Positions 10,024-48,245 of a DNA stretch of 64,000 nucleotides are shown piece after piece (positions within the stretch are counted from its first letter, which is position 1; every line of letters starts with the position of its first letter). Location: the IMG/VR virus record IMGVR_UViG_3300017991_000048, positions 1 to 64,000 of that record; one strand, given 5' to 3'. The notes below the pieces were generated by a model. It was not told where the DNA came from, searched no databases, and was given only the letters and a program-made list of their open reading frames with translations. The position numbers and the translations under genes were made by a program.

Positions 10024-10767
10024 CTAACTCCTCTGTACGAATGCTTCGATACTCCAATCGATTGTTGCAACTTCATTCGGAACCGCTCTGATAACGAAGT
10101 CCGTGCCAGATACCACTGCATCGATACTCCAGATCAGACTCTCACTTTCCTGCGGACCGTTTAGTATTAGCAGATCATGCACCCGTTCTGCATTTGTGTC
10201 ATCTCTGCTGAATAGTGCCGAAAACACCCAAGTCTTATACTTCAACACAGTGCTATCGGTCGCAACGATAGTCCCCCAAATTACGTATGCTCCGTTGTCA
10301 GTGCCGGGATCAAAAGTGCCGAGATTCGCTGCCGTATCCGAGCTGGTCTGAATATCGGCATCAATATCAAACCCGCCACCGCCGCCACCGGGGATTGTTA
10401 CGACCGTTTTTCCGCCAGCATCCGCTGCTGTAACACCGGCTCCTACGAAGTTTAGATCGTCCCTTTGGGTTAATGGGGTGCCCTCATCTTCAATTGTATG
10501 ACCGCTTCCTGCTGGCCCGGTTGGACCAATAGGCCCGGTTGGACCAATAGGCCCGGTTGCCCCAAAACCGCCTGTTGGTCCAGTGGCTCCGGGTCCGCCT
10601 GTTGGCCCTGTCGGTCCTGGGGGTCCCGGTGGTCCGCCTGGGCCTGTAGCGCCGGTATGATCCAGAAGCTCTGGCTGGCCGCTCTCGTTGATATAAAACA
10701 CCACATACATATCCGAAGGCGGCGGCGGCACCGCCCCAGAAGGTCGTCTTCTTAATGCTATAGTCAT
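10024..10767 (-). CDS. Collagen-like (Gly-X-Y) fibre protein
   Basis: About 16 GXY triplets ([14 protein letters not shown]...), EDEG..NFVG.GVT module shared with 11375..12727; start MTIALRRR. Confidence 0.8.
10501..10650 (-). repeat. Collagen-encoding 9/18-nt tandem repeats
   Basis: ggcccggttggaccaata-type repeats on the + strand. Confidence 0.85.
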
Positions 10768-10769
10768 CT

Positions 10770-11333
10770 TTAACCTACCTGCATCCAGTTTGCTCCATCT
10801 GAACGGAGTTTGACCCACTCATAATCGGTGTTCATCACATGGCTCGCTGCCCCGTCTATCGTTTCGCCACCGAATGTGTTTATCGTGCAATTGTTGGTTG
10901 CCGCTGTAGTCAACTTGACCCAAATCTCACGGTTTGTTCCGCCAACTGCTGTAGGCAGAGTTACCGTGGCAACACCGCCTGAAACATCGACTCTGATAAG
11001 CTCCCCAAGAGCAGCGGCGATAGCTCCGGTCTGAACGGCTGTCTGAAGTACAGGCGTTCCACCTAATAAACCCGGAGCCTTCCAAGTAGCTGCCACAGCC
11101 GAGTCCGCTGTTAAAACGCCGCCTGCAACCGGAGGGGCTGATGCTGAAACATCAACTGGCGCTCCCGTGGTAGCCAGTTCGTCTGCTGTTCCAACCCCAG
11201 ATGGCCGCACAACACCGGCATCATCTTTGGTTTTCAGAATGTCATCAGCAAGATCAACAAACAGACTCAACTGGTCTGTCGCTGGTAACACCACACTAGC
11301 GGCACTCTGTTTCTTTAACGTAATCTGACCCAT
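10770..11333 (-). CDS. Fibre/appendage structural protein
   Basis: Ala/Thr/Val rich; C-terminal TIDG...[11 protein letters not shown] module; shared N-terminal module. Confidence 0.7.
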
Positions 11334-31149: not shown

Positions 31150-31320
31150 TCCGGAACTTTATTATATCAAATGCTGACGGGAACAATTTTGCTTGTTAGC
31201 GAAATCATTTACTTTTTTGTCCAGAAATTTTTATTTTCGTGTAAATTGTTGAGATCGGTCCTGTTTTCGGTGTAGTAGATACTGTCAACCTTTTGGCGTA
31301 GGGCCAGAAAGAAAATGTAA

Positions 31321-32013
31321 ATGTTAACTAAGGCTAGAAAATATCAAGCAACCCTGAGAGGCGTGACTCCAATACTTATGAACAATGACAATCTCGCCTG
31401 GAAGGAAAGGGTAAAAGCGTGGCAGATCGACCCGGCCAACAAATCCAAGAGCGTAAAAGGTGACGACCGTTCCCCCGCCTGGACTTGGATTGGCTGTTTG
31501 TACAAGGCCAATGACTTGATCGTCGTTGAGTCTGACGCGATCATGGCAATGCTCCGAGACGCTGGACAGAAATGTCCAACCGGAAAAGGTAGGGCATCTT
31601 ACAAGGCCATAACCCAAAGCGGCATCCTTGTGGACCAAATCGGCTGGCCGGTGGAGACCTCCAAGGGGTTCATAAAGTGGTCATCTTTTGACGCCCTCCA
31701 TGATGACGAGGACTTTACAGTTCACGAAAAGGTGGCGAACCAGCACGGGATTGACCTTTTTGTCAAAAGGGTAACAATTGGCAACAGTAAGTGGGTCAGA
31801 GTCAGACCACGATTCGATCAGTGGAAGATTGAGGGAACCATTACTGTAGTGGACGATACCCTTACAACGGACGTCCTTCAGACTATCTTTAATGTCGGAG
31901 GGCACCGCTGCGGTCTGTGTGACTGGAGACCGGGAAGTCCCAAGAAGCCCGGTAGTTTCGGCATGTTTGAAACCACACTCAAAGAGATTAAAATGGAAGG
32001 AGTTGCGGCATGA
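31321..32013 (+). CDS. Stand-alone RAMP-superfamily (Cas7/Cas5-like fold) protein
   Basis: N-terminal LRGVTPILMN strand, IVVESDAIMAMLRDAG helix, RVRPRFDQW, C-terminal Gly-rich loop GGHRCGLCDWRPG....GSFGMFE; no other cas genes. Confidence 0.7.
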   Translation: MLTKARKYQATLRGVTPILMNNDNLAWKERVKAWQIDPANKSKSVKGDDRSPAWTWIGCLYKANDLIVVESDAIMAMLRDAGQKCPTGKGRASYKAITQSGILVDQIGWPVETSKGFIKWSSFDALHDDEDFTVHEKVANQHGIDLFVKRVTIGNSKWVRVRPRFDQWKIEGTITVVDDTLTTDVLQTIFNVGGHRCGLCDWRPGSPKKPGSFGMFETTLKEIKMEGVAA

Positions 32014-32462
32014 GTGGCAAGACAAACGTATTTTTCGGCGGGGTGCCAACGGCTCCCGACGTAAAGAAACTCATGGATCATTTCGGAGTGCCTGAGGAAA
32101 ACGTGTTACTGAACTGGACCGAAATCGAAGAGGTGATAGGAGAGGAGAAAGGCTCCAGCCGTTTCACTTCCGTTACCGGGGCATGGAGGAAAAAGCTTCG
32201 TAAGGACCATAATATCGAAATGATCCCCGAAATCGGCAAGGGTCTGAAAGCCGCTAATCCGCATGAGCGTGTTGATCTGGCAGGAGGTCTTATCCACAAA
32301 GCCACCAATAGCATCAAACGCTCCATCTCTGTAGCCGACAAGACAGACGTAACCCGATTGGACGAAGAGCATAAGAAACGACACACTTTTCTTAGTGTGT
32401 TAGGCGGAAAGATGCGTATGCTTTTCATCAACGAGCAGAAGAAGCTGCCTACCGGCGAATAG
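32010..32462 (+). CDS. RAMP-associated accessory protein, possibly winged-helix
   Basis: ATGA overlap with RAMP gene; 150 aa, basic; directly precedes pentamer array. Confidence 0.75.
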   Translation: MSGKTNVFFGGVPTAPDVKKLMDHFGVPEENVLLNWTEIEEVIGEEKGSSRFTSVTGAWRKKLRKDHNIEMIPEIGKGLKAANPHERVDLAGGLIHKATNSIKRSISVADKTDVTRLDEEHKKRHTFLSVLGGKMRMLFINEQKKLPTGE

Positions 32463-32471
32463 CCGGTAAAC

Positions 32472-32900
32472 TGAGGATTCTGTTGCGGCAGGGTGTGCTT
32501 CGATTCGGCAGGGTTAGCCAGGGCTTGGTCAGGTCCGCTACGGTATGGTTGGGTGAGGATTATGGTTCGGCAAGGTTCGCCAGGGTACGGTAGGCTGCGG
32601 TCTACTACGGTTCGGTTGGTACGCTTTGGTTCGGTCGGGTCTGGTGAGGATTATGGCCCGGTGAGTTGGGCAGCGAGGTTAGGGACGTGGTTTGTTGAGA
32701 CTCGGTTGGCTTTGGCCCTGTTTGGTACGCTGCGGCAAGGTGAGGACCCTGGTTTGGTGAAGGTATGGCACGTTTCGTTTCGCTATGGTTGGGCCGGGTG
32801 AGGTATGGTACGGTCGGGTTGCCTTTGGTTTGGTGTGGCGAGGATTGCGTTTTGGCGAGCTATGGTATGGCAAGGTTTGGCGAGGATTAGGGTATGGCTA
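32472..32900 (+). ncRNA. G-G-Y-N-N pentamer array, candidate guide-RNA locus (five units)
   Basis: About 75 tandem pentamers with mostly GGT/GGC (else GNY) at positions 1-3 and variable positions 4-5; 7-nt GGA(T/C)nnn spacers after (G)YGA at 32475, 32557, 32648, 32744, 32842, 32884. Confidence 0.75.
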
Positions 32901-33091
32901 TGACCAACGCAGAGATTTATTGCTTTACCTGGAAATATATCGGAGGTGTCTACCACGCAAAAAATGAGGACGGTAATCCTCTGTGTGGTGCTTACCCAAC
33001 CAATCTCAGATCCTCCGATGTCAAACCCAGAGGCTACCGGCCCTGTAAACGGTGTTTCCGGGACTTGTGGGATCACTTGATTAAGGAATAA
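32900..33091 (+). CDS. Zn-finger protein with LWDHL tag
   Basis: YH......LCG...CKRC, paralog of 28355; ends DLWDHLIKE. Confidence 0.8.
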   Translation: MTNAEIYCFTWKYIGGVYHAKNEDGNPLCGAYPTNLRSSDVKPRGYRPCKRCFRDLWDHLIKE

Positions 33092-33290
33092 AACGATGGA
33101 TGGCGATGGTAATATTCCCGACAGCATTATCGAGTCTACGGTCCGCAAGTGGCTGAAGGGCAACTACCGTGATGTTTACCCAACCCCCACAATGATATAC
33201 AACGCTCTCTTGCGTATTAAAACTGGCTCTCAAAGAAACCGCCAGTCTGAAGTGGGAAGAGATAAAAGACGAAGCCCTGGTAAAGTAACT

Positions 33291-35025: not shown

Positions 35026-35344
35026 TCACCCTTTTCGCTCGTTGCCCTCTGTGGTCAAGGCTGACATAGCCATCCCCAAAGCCACAATGCGGTTCGGGTG
35101 CGTAACCTCAATATAAGCGTCCTCGCTGTGATGGAGCTTCACGCGCCAGAAAGGGATTTGATCAGGCTTGTGTTCCAGGGACCTCGATATAAGCATCCTC
35201 ACTGTGATGGAGCTTCACCCGCCAGAAAGGGATTTGATCAGGCTTGTGCTCCAGGGACAGAGTTATCTCTGTCGGACCCCATGCTTTCTCAGCCGCTTCG
35301 CGTACAGCGGTAATTTCGTCTCTACGAGTTACGGTGGTATCCAT
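35026..35344 (-). pseudogene. Small gene disrupted by a 76-bp tandem duplication
   Basis: MDTTVT...YIEV reading resumes as THPNRIVALG...ERKG* only if one copy is removed. Confidence 0.6.
35105..35256. repeat. 76-bp tandem duplication (2 copies, 5 differences)
   Basis: 35105-35180 vs 35181-35256. Confidence 0.9.
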
Positions 35345-38118: not shown

Positions 38119-39308
38119 TGGCACACATATCTCGAATACGGCGGCAGAAAGAATTAACAGCCCACAAGGAGTTATTCCCCTACTTGCCAATAGAGGATCA
38201 AAGATTGCTCCGCTTTTATCTTCAAGAAAAGTGTAGCCAAGCGAGCCTCGCGGCAAAATTTAATACGCCGCAGTCAACAATACATTACCGTTTAACCAGG
38301 ATAGCCAAGCGCTTAGAGTTTCTGAAGTACTTTCCTATACTTTCCAAAACAGAACTCGAAAAACTATTTCACTCAATCGGAGTAGACTCTAAGACCGTAC
38401 AGATGATGGCGGCGTTGTACTTAACCACAAGTCAAGCCAGTGCTGCTAAAGAAGTTGGCTGCGGCCTAAGTGTAATTGCTTACAACCAACGAAAAACAAT
38501 TGCTTTGCTTCATAAATTAGTGGCAGCGGGAGCGTGGGACTACGAGCCCCTTTTGCGTGGTATGCTCATGATCAAAGACAATTACAAACTTCTGTGTAAG
38601 CCACAAAGAGAGGCCATTCGCAATGTATGGGCGGATAAAACATTAGACCAGATGAAAGACATTATTCTTGAGCACTTTTATGGTACAGGAAATTGGCCTA
38701 GCTCAAAAACCTCTCTAAAATTCAGATCCTTGGCTGAAACGCTTCGTAAATACAGAGGGACTTCATTGTCAAAACTCGTGGAGGAACTTGGTGGCCCTAA
38801 GGCAAGACCAACTATTTTATATGTTGGTCTTTCGCCCGAAAAGCGGAAACTGATTAAATTCTTGCCTAAAACAGAGCAAGATATGATTCGGGCTTATTAT
38901 ATCAAAGGTTTGAAGCAGGAACAGATCAGCCTGAAACATGATATGACACAGGCAGCGGTATCATATCGCTTAAAAACAGCCCATAAACGATTGGAGTTTT
39001 TGCTAAAATTTCCTATTCTGGAAAGGGATGAAATCACGAGAGTCTTGGAGTCAGCCGATTTCTTACCGGAATCTATACAGATATTGATAGCTTTATATGA
39101 GACTACTAGCCAAAGTGCTACTGCTAAGAGACTGGGGGTTTCACAAGGAAAGGTCAGGTGGCATCTCCATAATGCAATAAAGACGCTTGAGCCTCTTGTC
39201 GCTTCCGGTCGGGAAGACCTTAAAGATGTTCTGTTGGGGCTGACAATGGTTCGGGATTGGAGTGGGGCACTTCACTCTTACCCTCATTCAAAATTTAGCC
39301 GGGGCTAA
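38118..39308 (+). CDS. Internally duplicated multi-HTH (sigma70 region-4-like) regulator
   Basis: Two copies of [LP..(D/E)Q.....Y......Q......Q..(I/V).YRL....KRLEFL..FP + second HTH TSQ...AK..G]. Confidence 0.7.
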   Translation: MAHISRIRRQKELTAHKELFPYLPIEDQRLLRFYLQEKCSQASLAAKFNTPQSTIHYRLTRIAKRLEFLKYFPILSKTELEKLFHSIGVDSKTVQMMAALYLTTSQASAAKEVGCGLSVIAYNQRKTIALLHKLVAAGAWDYEPLLRGMLMIKDNYKLLCKPQREAIRNVWADKTLDQMKDIILEHFYGTGNWPSSKTSLKFRSLAETLRKYRGTSLSKLVEELGGPKARPTILYVGLSPEKRKLIKFLPKTEQDMIRAYYIKGLKQEQISLKHDMTQAAVSYRLKTAHKRLEFLLKFPILERDEITRVLESADFLPESIQILIALYETTSQSATAKRLGVSQGKVRWHLHNAIKTLEPLVASGREDLKDVLLGLTMVRDWSGALHSYPHSKFSRG

Positions 39309-39361
39309 AAAATTCCAGATTTGCAAATAAGGGGTGGGTTTATAATTTAGACCCCCATACC

Positions 39362-39871
39362 TTGATTTTATCAACTTTTATTGCTATTTCATCAAGGTTT
39401 CAAACTTTCATCGATCGGTGTCCACGCGCATGATGGACGAGCCAATTCCGTGCCAATGGCATCATAAAAAAGATAAGCAAGCGGTTCTGTGTTTTTCCCC
39501 AATTTGATCAAGTTCCAGACCCCCCTCCCCCGGTAGGTGATCGACAACACACTGAGTCCGAGTTCGTGCCTACGGCACTCACTTGTGGACAGAGTTCTGT
39601 TTACCTTTTTTATTTTTCCTATTGAGATAATACTTGATATAATCAAGTTATCTTTTATATGATCAAGTTCACGGGCGTTACAGCACTTGATATAATCAAG
39701 TTTGCGTTATGCTATATTATCAAGTTCTAATCATGGCTAGTTCGCTGACGGTCGCTGACACGCAGGCACCCCCTCCCCCTTACCCCCTCCCCTGCCTATG
39801 AGCGTGTGTACCCATGGGGGTTGATTTAATCAACTTTGTCTTTTCCGGTGTATGGACCTTGATATAATCAA
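39362..39871. promoter_or_regulatory. Cluster of TTGAT-N3-ATCAA palindromic operators
   Basis: Perfect copies at 39362, 39634, 39687, 39821, 39859 plus half sites. Confidence 0.75.
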
Positions 39872-39894
39872 CTCTCACCCCCTATGGAGGACAG

Positions 39895-40761
39895 ATGTCT
39901 GAGGATACCATACAGAAGAGGCTGGCACAGTATAAGAAGCTGACGGCTGATATAGTCAAGCTCGAAGAGACTATAGTCAAATGCAAACAACTCAAGAGCG
40001 ATGTGGCCAAGGGGTTGCTGGACGAGAACGGCAAGGACAAGCTCTATGACCTGGGAGACGGCATACCCCTCTTCGTCTCAGGCACCAAAGCAGGCACTTG
40101 GTTTTTGGCCCCGCGTAAACGTACCATAGGTAGGAAAAAGAAGAAAAAGGCCGATTCCAAGCCCAAGGAAAAAGGGCCTTCTGAGCCCAAGGCCAAGAAA
40201 GGCAAGACGAAAAAGGTGATCCAGAACGGGCAGGTAGTAGAAGTCCCTGCTGAGAGCCCTGCCAAAAAGGGCCGCGTTATAGAGGCATCTGCGACCCTTA
40301 CCGGAACAGGCGCTATTTCGGCCCCTGAGCCAGACCCTGTTGAGCCGCCTCCCAGTCGGGATCTTCAGGCGGAGCCAGAACCAGTCGAGCCTGTTGAACC
40401 AGAACCTGTTGAACCAGTCGAGCCTGTAGAGGCCGATTCTGCCCCTGTTGAACCAGATCCGGAGCCAGACCCTGTTGAACCTGTTGCCCCAGTGGAACCA
40501 GACCCTGTTGAACCAGAGCCTGCCAAAAAGCCGGTCAAAATTACCCAAGAAATGGTTGATGAAATGAAGGCCCGTGCAGATCAGGGCATAGTGGACGCTG
40601 ATGCCGAAGCCGAAGCTCTCGAAAAGGCCCTACAAGAGGCTGACGAAAGCCCCGATCCAGAGCCCGTTTCTGACGCTACGGAGCAACAGGGCGCTTCTGA
40701 GAGCGATGAAGAGCTTGATCCTCTGGAACAGGCGCTTGCTGAATTGGAGCTTGATTCTTGA
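39895..40761 (+). CDS. Protein with Lys-rich and PEPVE-repeat regions
   Basis: RBS GGAGG; N-terminal coiled coil, VEP(E/D)P repeats, acidic helical C-tail. Confidence 0.8.
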   Translation: MSEDTIQKRLAQYKKLTADIVKLEETIVKCKQLKSDVAKGLLDENGKDKLYDLGDGIPLFVSGTKAGTWFLAPRKRTIGRKKKKKADSKPKEKGPSEPKAKKGKTKKVIQNGQVVEVPAESPAKKGRVIEASATLTGTGAISAPEPDPVEPPPSRDLQAEPEPVEPVEPEPVEPVEPVEADSAPVEPDPEPDPVEPVAPVEPDPVEPEPAKKPVKITQEMVDEMKARADQGIVDADAEAEALEKALQEADESPDPEPVSDATEQQGASESDEELDPLEQALAELELDS

Positions 40762-47545: not shown

Positions 47546-47612
47546 GTTGATTTAATCAAGTTCCCAAAAATATAGACGCCGGGGCGCTCGCAGGCTGACA
47601 GGTTTATTTATT

Positions 47613-47740
47613 GGACCGAACCGACCGGGTGGTTTGTATAGGACCGACTGGATCGGACCGAACTGACTGGACCGAACCGACCGGAGTGACCGGATGGTTT
47701 ATAGGCCGACTGGACCTACAGGGATCTATCGGACCAACAG
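47613..47740. repeat. GGACCGAAC(C/T)GAC(C/T)-type short tandem repeats
   Basis: Three 14-mers plus GGACC/GACT fragments inside a twice-repeated ~45-60-nt block. Confidence 0.75.
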
Positions 47741-48245
47741 GCGATCTCGGATGCGTCAGCATCCGGTAGCAGAGATCCGACCAACGGTGCGCTCCTGCCG
47801 CTTCGCGGCGTCGAGCATACCGTGGGTATCTTTCCTGCTCGCCTACTTGATTTTATCAAGTTTACGATTTTTATTTTTCCTACTTGATAATATAAAGTTC
47901 GACATGCGTTTCGTGCTACTATTATAGCGCGAAACTTGATTTTATCAAGTTTATCATTTTTATAGAAAAAATAAATCCTCACCTGCTCGGTGGGCGCTCG
48001 TGACAACGGATTTTTTCAGTGGGAAAGGTCGTCCGTGTACATACAAAAATACCGCTGTCGCTGTAATCTAAGTATGTGAATTTGCGGGACTTTCGTGCCA
48101 AAAATCGTGCCAAGTTTTTGCGTCCGATTTTCCAGAATTTTCTCAAAACACGCTTGCAATTTTCAGAACTTGATTAAATCAAGTTTCCGGTGTAATACTC
48201 GGATATGAAGCCCGTGAACTACGACATTGAACTTGATATCAACCT

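What the first reader, a model, noticed from the sequence alone, without database searches (positions are those of the whole stretch)
32472..32900. The pentamer array is punctuated into five units by a 7-nt GGA(T/C)nnn spacer after (G)YGA
Seen: the 5-nt register is broken six times by a 7-mer (GGATTCT 32475, GGATTAT 32557, GGATTAT 32648, GGACCCT 32744, GGATTGC 32842, GGATTAG 32884), each preceded by YGA. This gives units of about 15, 17, 18, 18 and 7 pentamers. Unit 1 NN string is GC AG GT TC TC AG TA AG TT CA CC AC AT TG GA. 32762-32841 gives AT AC TC TC AT TG CG GA AT AC CG TG TT TT GT GA. Unit 5 gives TT GA AT AT AA TT GA. NN strings differ between units, so this is not a simple satellite. 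Inference: the 7-mer is a processing or filament-capping signal and each unit is a separate guide. Single-base register slips in units 2-4 may be the same indel errors seen elsewhere.
Basis: partly seen in the sequence, partly recalled or inferred. Interest (0 to 1): 0.82.

Follow-up and report, generated by a model that had tools for sequence, protein, structure and literature searches.

The report
Phage VIPR guide-RNA array with heptamer punctuation
The pentamer tract is the guide-RNA array of a phage VIPR system (a recently described CRISPR-like, RNA-guided DNA-silencing system), and the 7-base interruptions are a family-wide punctuation mark that most likely separates one guide from the next; the system itself is already known.

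Summary
The intergenic stretch 32463-32893 has strong 5-nt periodicity. GGA(T/C)(T/C)NN heptamers, each preceded by GA, sit at exactly the six reported positions (6 found, 0.10 expected). The locus is a VIPR system (bioRxiv 10.64898/2026.04.26.720920). ORF 31321-32013 is a Vipr protein with a RAMP/Cas7 fold and full-length homology to the solved SUSP1 Vipr, including its GG-binding residues. ORF 32010-32462 is a conserved winged-helix-like accessory protein. The array is GGY/NN guide RNA.

Across about 100 related loci, 195 of 201 register breaks inside arrays are exactly 7 nt long. Their consensus is RA|GG-A-W-Y-R-N, a pentamer with 2 nt inserted between GG and Y. GGY positions carry 1.3-2 bits and NN positions 0-0.1 bits. 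Unit lengths match published vrRNA lengths, and paralogous units align from the heptamer.

So [quoted passage not shown] is well supported indirectly. No RNA-end data exist and no convincing target was found. The "indel error" idea is not supported: an independent assembly at about 41x depth is identical. This is probably the published, unconfirmed "staggered array" architecture, so I rate it a new member of a known kind.

The parts
31321..32013 (+). vipr gene (230 aa): RAMP/Cas7-like protein that should polymerise on the GGY/NN RNA
   Evidence: A PDB sequence search gives 'SUSP1 Vipr protein' (36pp_D) as best hit, E=9.5e-6. hhalign of the clade profile against SUSP1 Vipr gives probability 98.7%, E=2e-16, over 186 columns. 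The AF2 model has pLDDT 88.5. Foldseek top hits are type VII Cas7 and Csm3, E=5e-6. R162, C197 and D201-W202-R203 align with SUSP1 R138, C173 and D177-W178-R179. N21 replaces the clade-conserved His that aligns with SUSP1 H17.
32010..32462 (+). vap-like accessory gene (150 aa): N-terminal winged-helix-like domain plus long C-terminal helices
   Evidence: A homolog lies adjacent and on the same strand in 58 of 82 related loci. The AF2 model has pLDDT 87. Foldseek matches to wHTH DNA-binding domains (PurR N-terminus, SaeR/PhoP, CodY) are weak, E 0.02-0.1. There is no similarity to SUSP1 vap1.
32463..32893 (+). vrRNA array: about 70 GGY/NN pentamers in 5-6 units. It is predicted to be less structured than shuffled controls and is probably co-transcribed with vipr-vap.
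   Evidence: The RNA fold z-score is +2.2, and all 100 shuffles fold at least as well. No + strand terminator or strong promoter lies inside. There is no Rfam match.
32475..32481 (+). boundary heptamer 1, GGATTCT, preceded by GA; opens the array 13 nt after the vap stop codon
32482..32556 (+). unit 1: 15 pentamers in clean register, ending GGTGA
32557..32563 (+). boundary heptamer 2, GGATTAT
32564..32647 (+). unit 2: 10 pentamers, a 4-mer GGTT at 32614-32617 (a real 1-nt shortfall), then 6 pentamers
   Evidence: identical in the independent contig
32648..32654 (+). boundary heptamer 3, GGATTAT
32655..32681 (+). degenerate stretch: 2 pentamers, an odd 7-mer GTTGGGC (32665-32671), 2 pentamers. 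Possibly a decayed unit.
32682..32688 (+). probable extra boundary heptamer GGGACGT (the GGGAC class also occurs in relatives)
32689..32743 (+). unit 3b: 11 pentamers ending GGTGA
32744..32750 (+). boundary heptamer 4, GGACCCT (variant)
32751..32841 (+). unit 4: 1 pentamer, a 6-mer GGTGAA (32756-32761), then 16 pentamers ending GGCGA
32842..32848 (+). boundary heptamer 5, GGATTGC
32849..32883 (+). unit 5: 7 pentamers ending GGCGA
32884..32890 (+). terminal heptamer GGATTAG, which closes the array. The GAGGA at 32881-32885 also lies 8 nt before the ATG of ORF 32894-33091.

Best explanation
The tract is the guide-RNA (vrRNA) array of a phage-encoded VIPR system.

Shown here:
- The upstream gene encodes a Vipr, a RAMP/Cas7-fold protein homologous over its full length to the solved SUSP1 Vipr, with the GG- and Y-contacting residues conserved.
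- A conserved winged-helix-like accessory gene follows it.
- The array is GGY/NN on the same strand. GGY is conserved and NN is hypervariable across about 100 related loci.
- Throughout this clade the arrays are broken almost only by heptamers of the form GG-A-W-Y-R-N preceded by RA. In the window these are GA|GGATTNN or GA|GGACCCT.

Taken from the VIPR papers: one Vipr protomer binds each repeat. GG is held by one protomer and Y by the next. NN is displayed and pairs with target DNA, skipping every third base. In SUSP1 a 3' pseudoknot tail caps the filament.

Inferred here:
- The heptamer is a repeat with 2 nt inserted exactly between GG and Y, that is, at the protomer-protomer junction.
- GG followed by a purine instead of Y ends the upstream filament. 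The same 'GG+R' rule ends tracts in the sister subclade with tailed vrRNAs and in SUSP1.
- Y-NN restarts the next filament two bases out of register.
- The exposed A-W linker is the likely site where one long transcript is cut, or at least functionally divided, into separate guides of about 7-17 repeats.

On this reading the heptamer plus the preceding RA is a minimal substitute for the 3' tail and for an inter-guide spacer.
For: VIPR identity.
Locus synteny with SUSP1 (vipr, vap, downstream array).
Clade-wide arrays: present in 75 of 82 loci, with 132 candidate regions on the vipr strand against 17 on the other.
Heptamer rule: 195 of 201 breaks are 7-mers, including GGAAC 121, GGATC 25, GGACT 9, GGTTC 8, GGACC 6 and GGATT 6.
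Logo (n=217): GGY 1.3-2.0 bits and NN 0.0-0.1 bits. Position -2 is R (0.61 bits) and -1 is A (0.69 bits). h3 is A in 0.92 and h5 is Y.
Unit lengths: mode 8-10 pentamers, against tailed tracts with a median of 13 and the published 9-16.
Modularity: paralogous or duplicated units are anchored at heptamers, and NN strings are otherwise unique.
Tract ends: a nested 13-row subclade has tracts ending in GG+G followed by a mini-hairpin. L141 tracts mostly end in GGAT (seven of eight) followed by an AT-rich spacer.
Structure: the array RNA is less structured than shuffles.
In-window statistics.
Against: There is no RNA-seq for this or any related locus, so no 5' or 3' ends are known.

No convincing target delimits a unit. 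Six exact 8-dinucleotide cores scanned in IMG/VR gave chance-level hits, apart from two borderline cases:
- Unit 2a matches a terminase gene at 21 of 22 nt, but out of wobble phase.
- The first 11 dinucleotides of unit 4 match a portal gene at 22 of 22 nt in wobble phase, but the other 6 dinucleotides match at chance level.

The window's units are long (15-17 repeats) and contain +1 and -1 slips that should disturb a filament. The window array is among the most degenerate of the family. Covariation between h5 and the array's Y rests on only 2-3 T-rich loci. No nuclease is identified.
Confidence: 0.75

Rival explanations
1. The array is VIPR guide RNA but is not cut. The heptamer is only a 2-nt bulge or hinge in one long Vipr filament, or in a beads-on-a-string ribonucleoprotein, and adjacent units act together.
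For: No processing enzyme or ribozyme is visible. There is no Rfam hit and no anti-repeat copy in the window. The structure paper notes natural vrRNAs of up to 30 repeats. The window tolerates +1 and -1 slips inside units.
Against: Arrays reach about 27 units and 1.4 kb (L079). Units have the length of single vrRNAs. The purine after GG mimics the tract-ending rule of tailed vrRNAs. Other VIPR types insert hammerhead ribozymes between units, so separating units is the norm. Paralogous units are modular.
Confidence: 0.15
2. The conserved boundary block (GGYGAGGATT in the window) acts at the DNA level as repeated binding sites for the winged-helix accessory protein or another regulator, for example for autoregulation of the array.
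For: The Vap protein has a wHTH-like fold. The boundary block is the only sequence-specific element repeated in the tract: four exact copies inside the array and one elsewhere in the window.
Against: The heptamer's position is tied to the pentamer register (always exactly +2) and to the RNA-level GG/Y split. The motif is strand-specific, on the vipr strand, in all loci. Its sequence follows the RNA repeat grammar rather than a palindromic operator. Vap is missing from some arrays' immediate vicinity.
Confidence: 0.05
3. The heptamers are neutral scars of unit duplication or recombination in a decaying repeat tract and have no function.
For: The window's array is degenerate: 70% perfect GGY, with extra irregular breaks. 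Block duplications occur in relatives (L061).
Against: The same heptamer grammar recurs in Vipr lineages only 40-60% identical and across many bacterial phyla. Breaks of other lengths are almost absent (6 of 201). The flanking RA and h3=A are under constraint.
Confidence: 0.03
4. The register breaks are sequencing or assembly artefacts in a simple satellite.
Against: Logan's contig of the source run, at about 41x depth, is identical with no gaps. Fragments from three other samples are also identical. NN strings are non-repetitive.
Confidence: 0.01

Closest known systems
VIPR type II system of Escherichia phage SUSP1 (and P. fulva prophage); bioRxiv 10.64898/2026.04.26.720920 and 10.64898/2026.04.26.720927
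   Same: Both have a homologous Vipr protein with the GG/Y-binding residues conserved. Both show the order vipr, then a small accessory gene, then a downstream guide array on the same strand. Both use GGY/NN pentamers with hypervariable NN. Both are phage-encoded. In both, tracts end with GG followed by a purine.
   Different: Each SUSP1 vrRNA has about 12 repeats followed by its own roughly 40-nt pseudoknot tail, and further non-repeat sequence lies between neighbouring vrRNAs. In the window, units abut and are separated only by a 7-mer. The accessory protein is unrelated in sequence to vap1. The Vipr proteins are only about 22-31% identical.
'Staggered vrRNA arrays' mentioned in the VIPR discovery paper (fig. 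S18 legend)
   Same: The legend describes contiguous vrRNAs in which the end of one marks the start of the next, with no ribozyme or long tail. This is the architecture that best fits the heptamer-punctuated arrays seen here.
   Different: The figure could not be read, so identity is presumed rather than verified. The paper says only the other two architectures were confirmed by sRNA-seq. The text held here states neither the heptamer grammar (RA|GG-A-W-Y-R-N) nor its +2 register rule.
Hammerhead-ribozyme-interspersed VIPR arrays (types I and V)
   Same: Many guides are encoded head to tail in one transcript and must be separated at defined inter-unit elements.
   Different: Those arrays separate units by self-cleaving ribozymes. 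Here the inter-unit element is 7 nt, far too short to be catalytic, and there are no Rfam hits.
CRISPR arrays with Cas6/Cas5d processing (class 1)
   Same: Both show an alternation of a short conserved element (boundary) and a variable guide. Both have a RAMP-family protein coating the guide. Each guide is flanked by boundary elements on both sides.
   Different: The 'repeat' is 7-12 nt rather than 23-50 nt. The 'spacer' is itself a periodic GGY/NN scaffold of variable length. There are no cas1/cas2 or other cas genes. Recognition is non-contiguous (NNx).
TRAP (trp RNA-binding attenuation protein) binding sites
   Same: Both have a trinucleotide plus 2-nt spacer, giving RNA with 5-nt periodicity that is wrapped by an oligomeric protein, one subunit per repeat.
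   Different: TRAP binds 11 (G/U)AG repeats around a closed ring to regulate attenuation. It has no guide function, no RAMP fold and no arrays of units. This is an analogy only (from general knowledge).

Membership tests
VIPR system | Vipr protein: minimal RAMP with an RRM core, a glycine-rich loop and a thumb, homologous to described Viprs | tested here: met
   The PDB sequence hit is to SUSP1 Vipr, E=9.5e-6. hhalign gives probability 98.7%, E=2e-16. Foldseek top hits are Cas7 and Csm3. The thumb Arg and the G-loop Cys and D-W-R are conserved.
VIPR system | Tandem GGY/NN (YNNGG) pentanucleotide repeats next to vipr, on the same strand | tested here: met
   for the window. Arrays are present in 75 of 82 related loci, with 132 regions on the vipr strand and 17 on the other.
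VIPR system | GGY conserved and NN hypervariable across homologous loci | tested here: met
   The logo of 217 aligned boundaries gives GGY 1.3-2.0 bits and NN 0.0-0.1 bits. NN strings are essentially unique among the pairs formed by 213 units.
VIPR system | Minimal locus of vipr plus a vap accessory gene predicted to interact with DNA | tested here: met
   The 150-aa neighbour is conserved in 58 of 82 loci. It has a wHTH-like fold at weak Foldseek scores.
VIPR system | vrRNAs are expressed and bound by Vipr | not testable with these tools
   No RNA run holds the locus. Only metagenomic DNA contigs are available.
VIPR system | NN dinucleotides match natural DNA targets with a 1-nt skip, usually at the codon wobble position | tested here: inconclusive
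   There is no self or in-house match above shuffled controls. IMG/VR gave two borderline candidates. One is in a portal gene, 22 of 22 nt over 11 codons, in wobble phase. The other is in a terminase gene, 21 of 22 nt, out of phase.
VIPR type II (SUSP1-like) vrRNA architecture | Each repeat tract is followed by an invariable, roughly 40-nt structured 3' tail (pseudoknot) | tested here: not met
   Only 7 nt separate units. The tract folds worse than shuffles. The SUSP1 tails are shown for comparison.
VIPR 'staggered array' architecture | Contiguous vrRNAs whose ends coincide or overlap by 1 nt, without ribozymes or long tails | tested here: inconclusive
   The DNA architecture fits. The RNA ends and the published figure could not be examined.
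CRISPR-Cas array | Direct repeats of about 23-50 nt alternating with spacers, plus cas genes | tested here: not met
   No such repeats are found. There are no Cas families in Pfam or NCBIfam for the neighbours. The only RAMP is the Vipr.

The most novel reading that the evidence does not exclude
The heptamer (RA|GG-A-W-Y-R-N) may be a self-sufficient punctuation mark read by the Vipr filament itself. A 2-nt insertion at the protomer-protomer junction would end one filament, start the next and expose a linker. Dozens of guides (up to about 27 in relative L079) would then mature from one transcript without a tail, ribozyme or Cas6-like enzyme. If so, it would be the simplest known 'repeat-spacer' grammar and a plausible intermediate between tailed vrRNAs and CRISPR-type arrays. 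The tailed subclade is nested among the heptamer lineages when the tree is drawn with SUSP1 on a very long branch and midpoint-rooted, so the root is not secure.
Probability: 0.3. Interest if true: 0.6.

Novelty: new member of a known kind. Interest (0 to 1): 0.4.

Why it matters
VIPR systems were described only in 2026, and how multi-guide arrays without tails or ribozymes are divided into guides has not been shown experimentally. This locus belongs to a very large, uncultured-phage-dominated Vipr clade of more than 1,100 homologs. In that clade a crisp rule, a 2-nt insertion between GG and Y with a purine-A before it, marks every unit boundary.

The rule gives three practical things:
- a parser for calling individual guides, and hence targets, in these arrays;
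- a direct, cheap experimental test of vrRNA biogenesis;
- a design principle for compact multiplexed VIPR guide arrays.

For the window itself the result is mostly annotation. Three features that had no function assigned in the libraries searched here become a named defence or competition module.

Tried and rejected
- Rfam gathering scan and tRNA scan of the window: nothing found.
- Pfam, PHROGs and NCBIfam on the neighbouring proteins: only phrog_4652, of unknown function, for the Vipr.
- blastn of the locus against GenBank phages: no match.
- Coding explanation for the 102-aa ORF inside the tract: rejected, because 5-nt periodicity is incompatible with a codon structure. No homology search was run on that ORF.
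- tracr-like anti-repeat or an antisense copy of the boundary block: none in the window.
- A second array in the window: the G-rich stretch near 39725-39849 (- strand) and the GGTCC repeats at 47600-47760 are not period-5 arrays.
- Target hunting: all family guides against all held loci were no better than shuffled guides. The window guides against the window and loci gave no self-target, and the skip-3 control recovered the array itself.
- Six IMG/VR scans with exact 8-dinucleotide cores: chance-level apart from the two borderline hits already described. The U2a hit fails the wobble-phase expectation, and no other guide hits the same element.
- Covariation of h5 with the array's pyrimidine: suggestive, with 7 of 10 against 17 of 298, but it rests on very few T-rich loci.
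- Assigning the published VIPR type (I-VII): not possible, because the figures and supplements are not held.

Full report
**1. The observation**

The intergenic stretch 32463-32893 lies between ORF 32010-32462 and ORF 32894-33091, both on the + strand. It is 41% G. Identity autocorrelation peaks at lags 5, 10, 15 and 20.

Dynamic-programming segmentation into GGY-led segments gives 74 five-nucleotide segments, of which about 70 form the array proper. Each is preceded by GA.
- GAGGAYY occurs six times in these 431 nt. Markov simulations of the tract expect 0.10.
- Four more register breaks exist: a 4-mer at 32614, an irregular 7-mer at 32665, GGGACGT at 32682 and a 6-mer at 32756.
- Within the window, G1 is 0.94, G2 0.73 and Y3 1.00, while N4 and N5 carry under 0.1 bit.

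**2. What the locus is**

A literature search on pentanucleotide repeats in phages returned the 2026 description of VIPR systems. A VIPR system has a small RAMP protein (Vipr), an accessory gene (vap) and guide RNAs (vrRNAs) built of alternating GGY and NN. The NN dinucleotides pair with DNA while every third target base is skipped.

The cryo-EM paper shows one protomer per repeat. G1 and G2 are held by one protomer and Y3 by the next. In SUSP1 a 3' pseudoknot caps the filament.

Evidence that the window carries such a system:
- ORF 31321-32013 has 'SUSP1 Vipr protein' as its best hit among all PDB sequences, E=9.5e-6.
- A profile of 25 clade members aligns with SUSP1 Vipr over 186 columns, probability 98.7%, E=2e-16.
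- The thumb Arg, the G-loop Cys and the D-W-R residues are conserved. The His that contacts G1 in SUSP1 is conserved in the clade but is Asn21 in the window protein.
- The AF2 model (pLDDT 88.5) matches Cas7 of type VII and Csm3 of type III complexes.
- ORF 32010-32462 has adjacent, same-strand homologs in 58 of 82 related loci. It models as a winged-helix-like domain plus long helices, with weak Foldseek scores.
- The gene order vipr, accessory gene, array is the same as in SUSP1.
- The window comes from a 398-kb IMG/VR contig and carries virion-type genes.

**3. The heptamer is a family rule**

The Vipr has more than 1,100 homologs. I fetched 3 viral, 79 metagenomic and 23 genomic related loci. 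Arrays are present in 75 of 82 loci, almost always on the vipr strand.

Inside arrays, 195 of 201 register breaks flanked by good pentamers are exactly 7 nt long. The main classes are GGAAC 121, GGATC 25, GGACT 9, GGTTC 8, GGACC 6 and GGATT 6.

The logo of 217 boundaries reads ...GGY NN GGY RA | G G A W Y R N | GGY NN...
- GGY carries 1.3-2.0 bits.
- Ordinary NN carries 0.0-0.1 bits.
- The dinucleotide before the heptamer carries 0.6-0.7 bits (R, then A).
- h3 is A in 92% of cases.

The heptamer is therefore a normal repeat with two extra bases between GG and Y. Relatives show this very cleanly. L079 has about 27 units in 1.4 kb. L050 has an invariant GGTAA-GGTAA-GGACTAA-GGC boundary.

**4. 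Are units separate guides?**

Indirect evidence says yes.
- Units between heptamers have a mode of 8-10 pentamers and a range of 2-18. This matches the published 9-16 repeats per vrRNA.
- A nested subclade of 13 rows (Pseudorhodoferax sp. Leaf274, Rubrivivax, Planctomycetota and others) has no heptamers. It has separate tracts instead, with a median of 13 repeats.
- In most of that subclade, tracts end in GG+G followed by a 4-5-bp hairpin with an AAT(G) loop. In L141, tracts mostly end in GGAT (seven of eight) followed by an AT-rich spacer.
- In SUSP1 the last GG is also followed by a purine. 'GG then purine' therefore looks like a general end-of-tract signal, and the heptamer looks like its minimal form.
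- Duplicated or paralogous units within a locus align from the heptamer, while NN strings are otherwise unique.
- Arrays typically open and close with a heptamer, as in the window.
- The window's tract folds worse than every shuffle (z=+2.2), as expected for a protein-coated linear guide.
[quoted passage not shown] I think the heptamer arrays are that architecture, but I could not see the figure.

**5. What is not shown**

No RNA data exist for the locus, so processing is an inference. I could not find a convincing target.
- In-house scans with the 1-nt-skip rule are no better than shuffled guides, and there is no self-target.
- Six exact 8-dinucleotide cores were scanned in IMG/VR. Each returned about 10-20 hits, as chance predicts.
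- Exception 1: unit 2a matches the terminase large-subunit gene of five near-identical contigs at 21 of 22 nt, including the heptamer's last two bases. The skipped base falls on codon position 1, and no other guide hits that element.
- Exception 2: the first 11 dinucleotides of unit 4 match the portal gene of L187 and L189 at 22 of 22 nt, with the skipped base on the wobble position (peptide VMSRHIEDVIS). The remaining six dinucleotides match at chance level.
- Each exception is expected roughly 0.02-0.3 times by chance in a database of this size, using my own rough size estimate. I treat them as leads, not findings.

**6. The register slips**

Logan's independent contig from the source run (word depth about 41) is identical to the window over 31200-33200, with no gaps. 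Short contigs from three other sediment samples are identical too. The -1 and +1 slips and the irregular stretch at 32655-32688 are therefore real sequence, not indel errors. Such slips are rare in relatives (6 of 201 breaks). The window's array is among the most degenerate: 70% perfect GGY, against a median of 95%. This may reflect decay or relaxed G2 reading. I did not resolve it.

**7. Mechanism proposed**

Vipr protomers coat the transcript one per pentamer and display NN. At RA|GG-A-W-Y the purine after GG cannot enter the pyrimidine pocket of the next protomer, so the filament ends. The Y two bases later seeds the next filament in a new register. The exposed A-W linker is then cut, by an unidentified nuclease or by Vipr itself, or it simply uncouples neighbouring filaments.

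The steps taken from the literature are the protomer contacts and the skip rule. The steps inferred here are filament termination at the heptamer and cleavage.

Rivals are an uncut hinge (0.15), DNA-level operator sites for the winged-helix protein (0.05), neutral scars (0.03) and artefact (0.01).

**8. Verdict**

The system is known. This is a new member, in the tail-less contiguous architecture, with a GGT/GGATT flavour instead of the clade's usual GGC/GGAAC. The heptamer grammar and its mapping onto the protomer junction are a useful and testable detail. It may or may not already be in the published figure.

Noticed in passing
window 39300-39900 and 47880-47950 (read on the - strand): At least eight copies of a palindrome close to CTTGATWWWATCAAG lie in two long intergenic regions. 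They look like operator or phage-promoter sites for one regulator.
   Followed up: no
window 47600-47760 (- strand): Repeated GGTCC motifs, with CCGGTCGGTTCGGTCCA occurring twice. TRF reports a 14-nt period at 47654-47685. This is not a period-5 VIPR array.
   Followed up: partly
window 31381-31383 (codon 21 of the vipr gene): The window's Vipr has Asn where at least 90% of clade members have His. That His aligns with SUSP1 H17, which hydrogen-bonds G1 of the repeat. The window's array is also unusually degenerate, mainly at G2.
   Followed up: partly
window 32881-32896: The last boundary block (GAGGA) lies 8 nt before the ATG of a 65-aa Cys-rich ORF (32894-33091), so it may double as that ORF's ribosome-binding site. 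The ORF has no homolog next to Vipr in 82 related loci.
   Followed up: partly
L187:3646-3677 and L189 (portal gene, phrog_12): The first 11 dinucleotides of unit 4 match 11 consecutive codons (VMSRHIEDVIS) at 22 of 22 nt, with the skipped base on the wobble position. The rest of the unit does not match. This is a borderline candidate target.
   Followed up: partly
L183:2533-2564 (terminase large subunit), and also L168, L172, L173, L180: Unit 2a, including the heptamer's last two bases, matches at 21 of 22 nt, but the skipped base is codon position 1. This is probably chance.
   Followed up: partly
L134, L137, L139, L142, L148 and others (13-row subclade); L141: A nested Vipr subclade has no heptamers. 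Instead, most of its vrRNA tracts end in GG+G followed by a 4-5-bp hairpin with an AAT(G) loop. In L141, binned to a Candidatus Saccharibacteria MAG, tracts are separated by an AT-rich spacer of about 25 nt that mostly begins GGAT.
   Followed up: partly
L036:3900-3960 and L047:1390-1430: The last unit of some heptamer arrays ends in a conserved GC-rich hairpin (GGACCGGGG..GCGGCGGATACGC..). This suggests a terminal tail or terminator only at the end of the array.
   Followed up: no
L061:3073-3350: An exact tandem duplication of a two-unit block shows that arrays grow by unit-block duplication. A recurring irregular 7-mer, GGCGAGG, follows each copy.
   Followed up: no
window 35105-35258: A 76-bp tandem repeat with two copies at 93% identity overlaps small ORFs on both strands.
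   Followed up: no
window 10514-10559: A perfect 18-bp repeat (2.6 copies, GGCCCGGTTGGACCAATA) lies inside ORF 10024-10818, in a region with several 9-bp G/C-rich repeats. It may encode a collagen-like or fibre protein.
   Followed up: no
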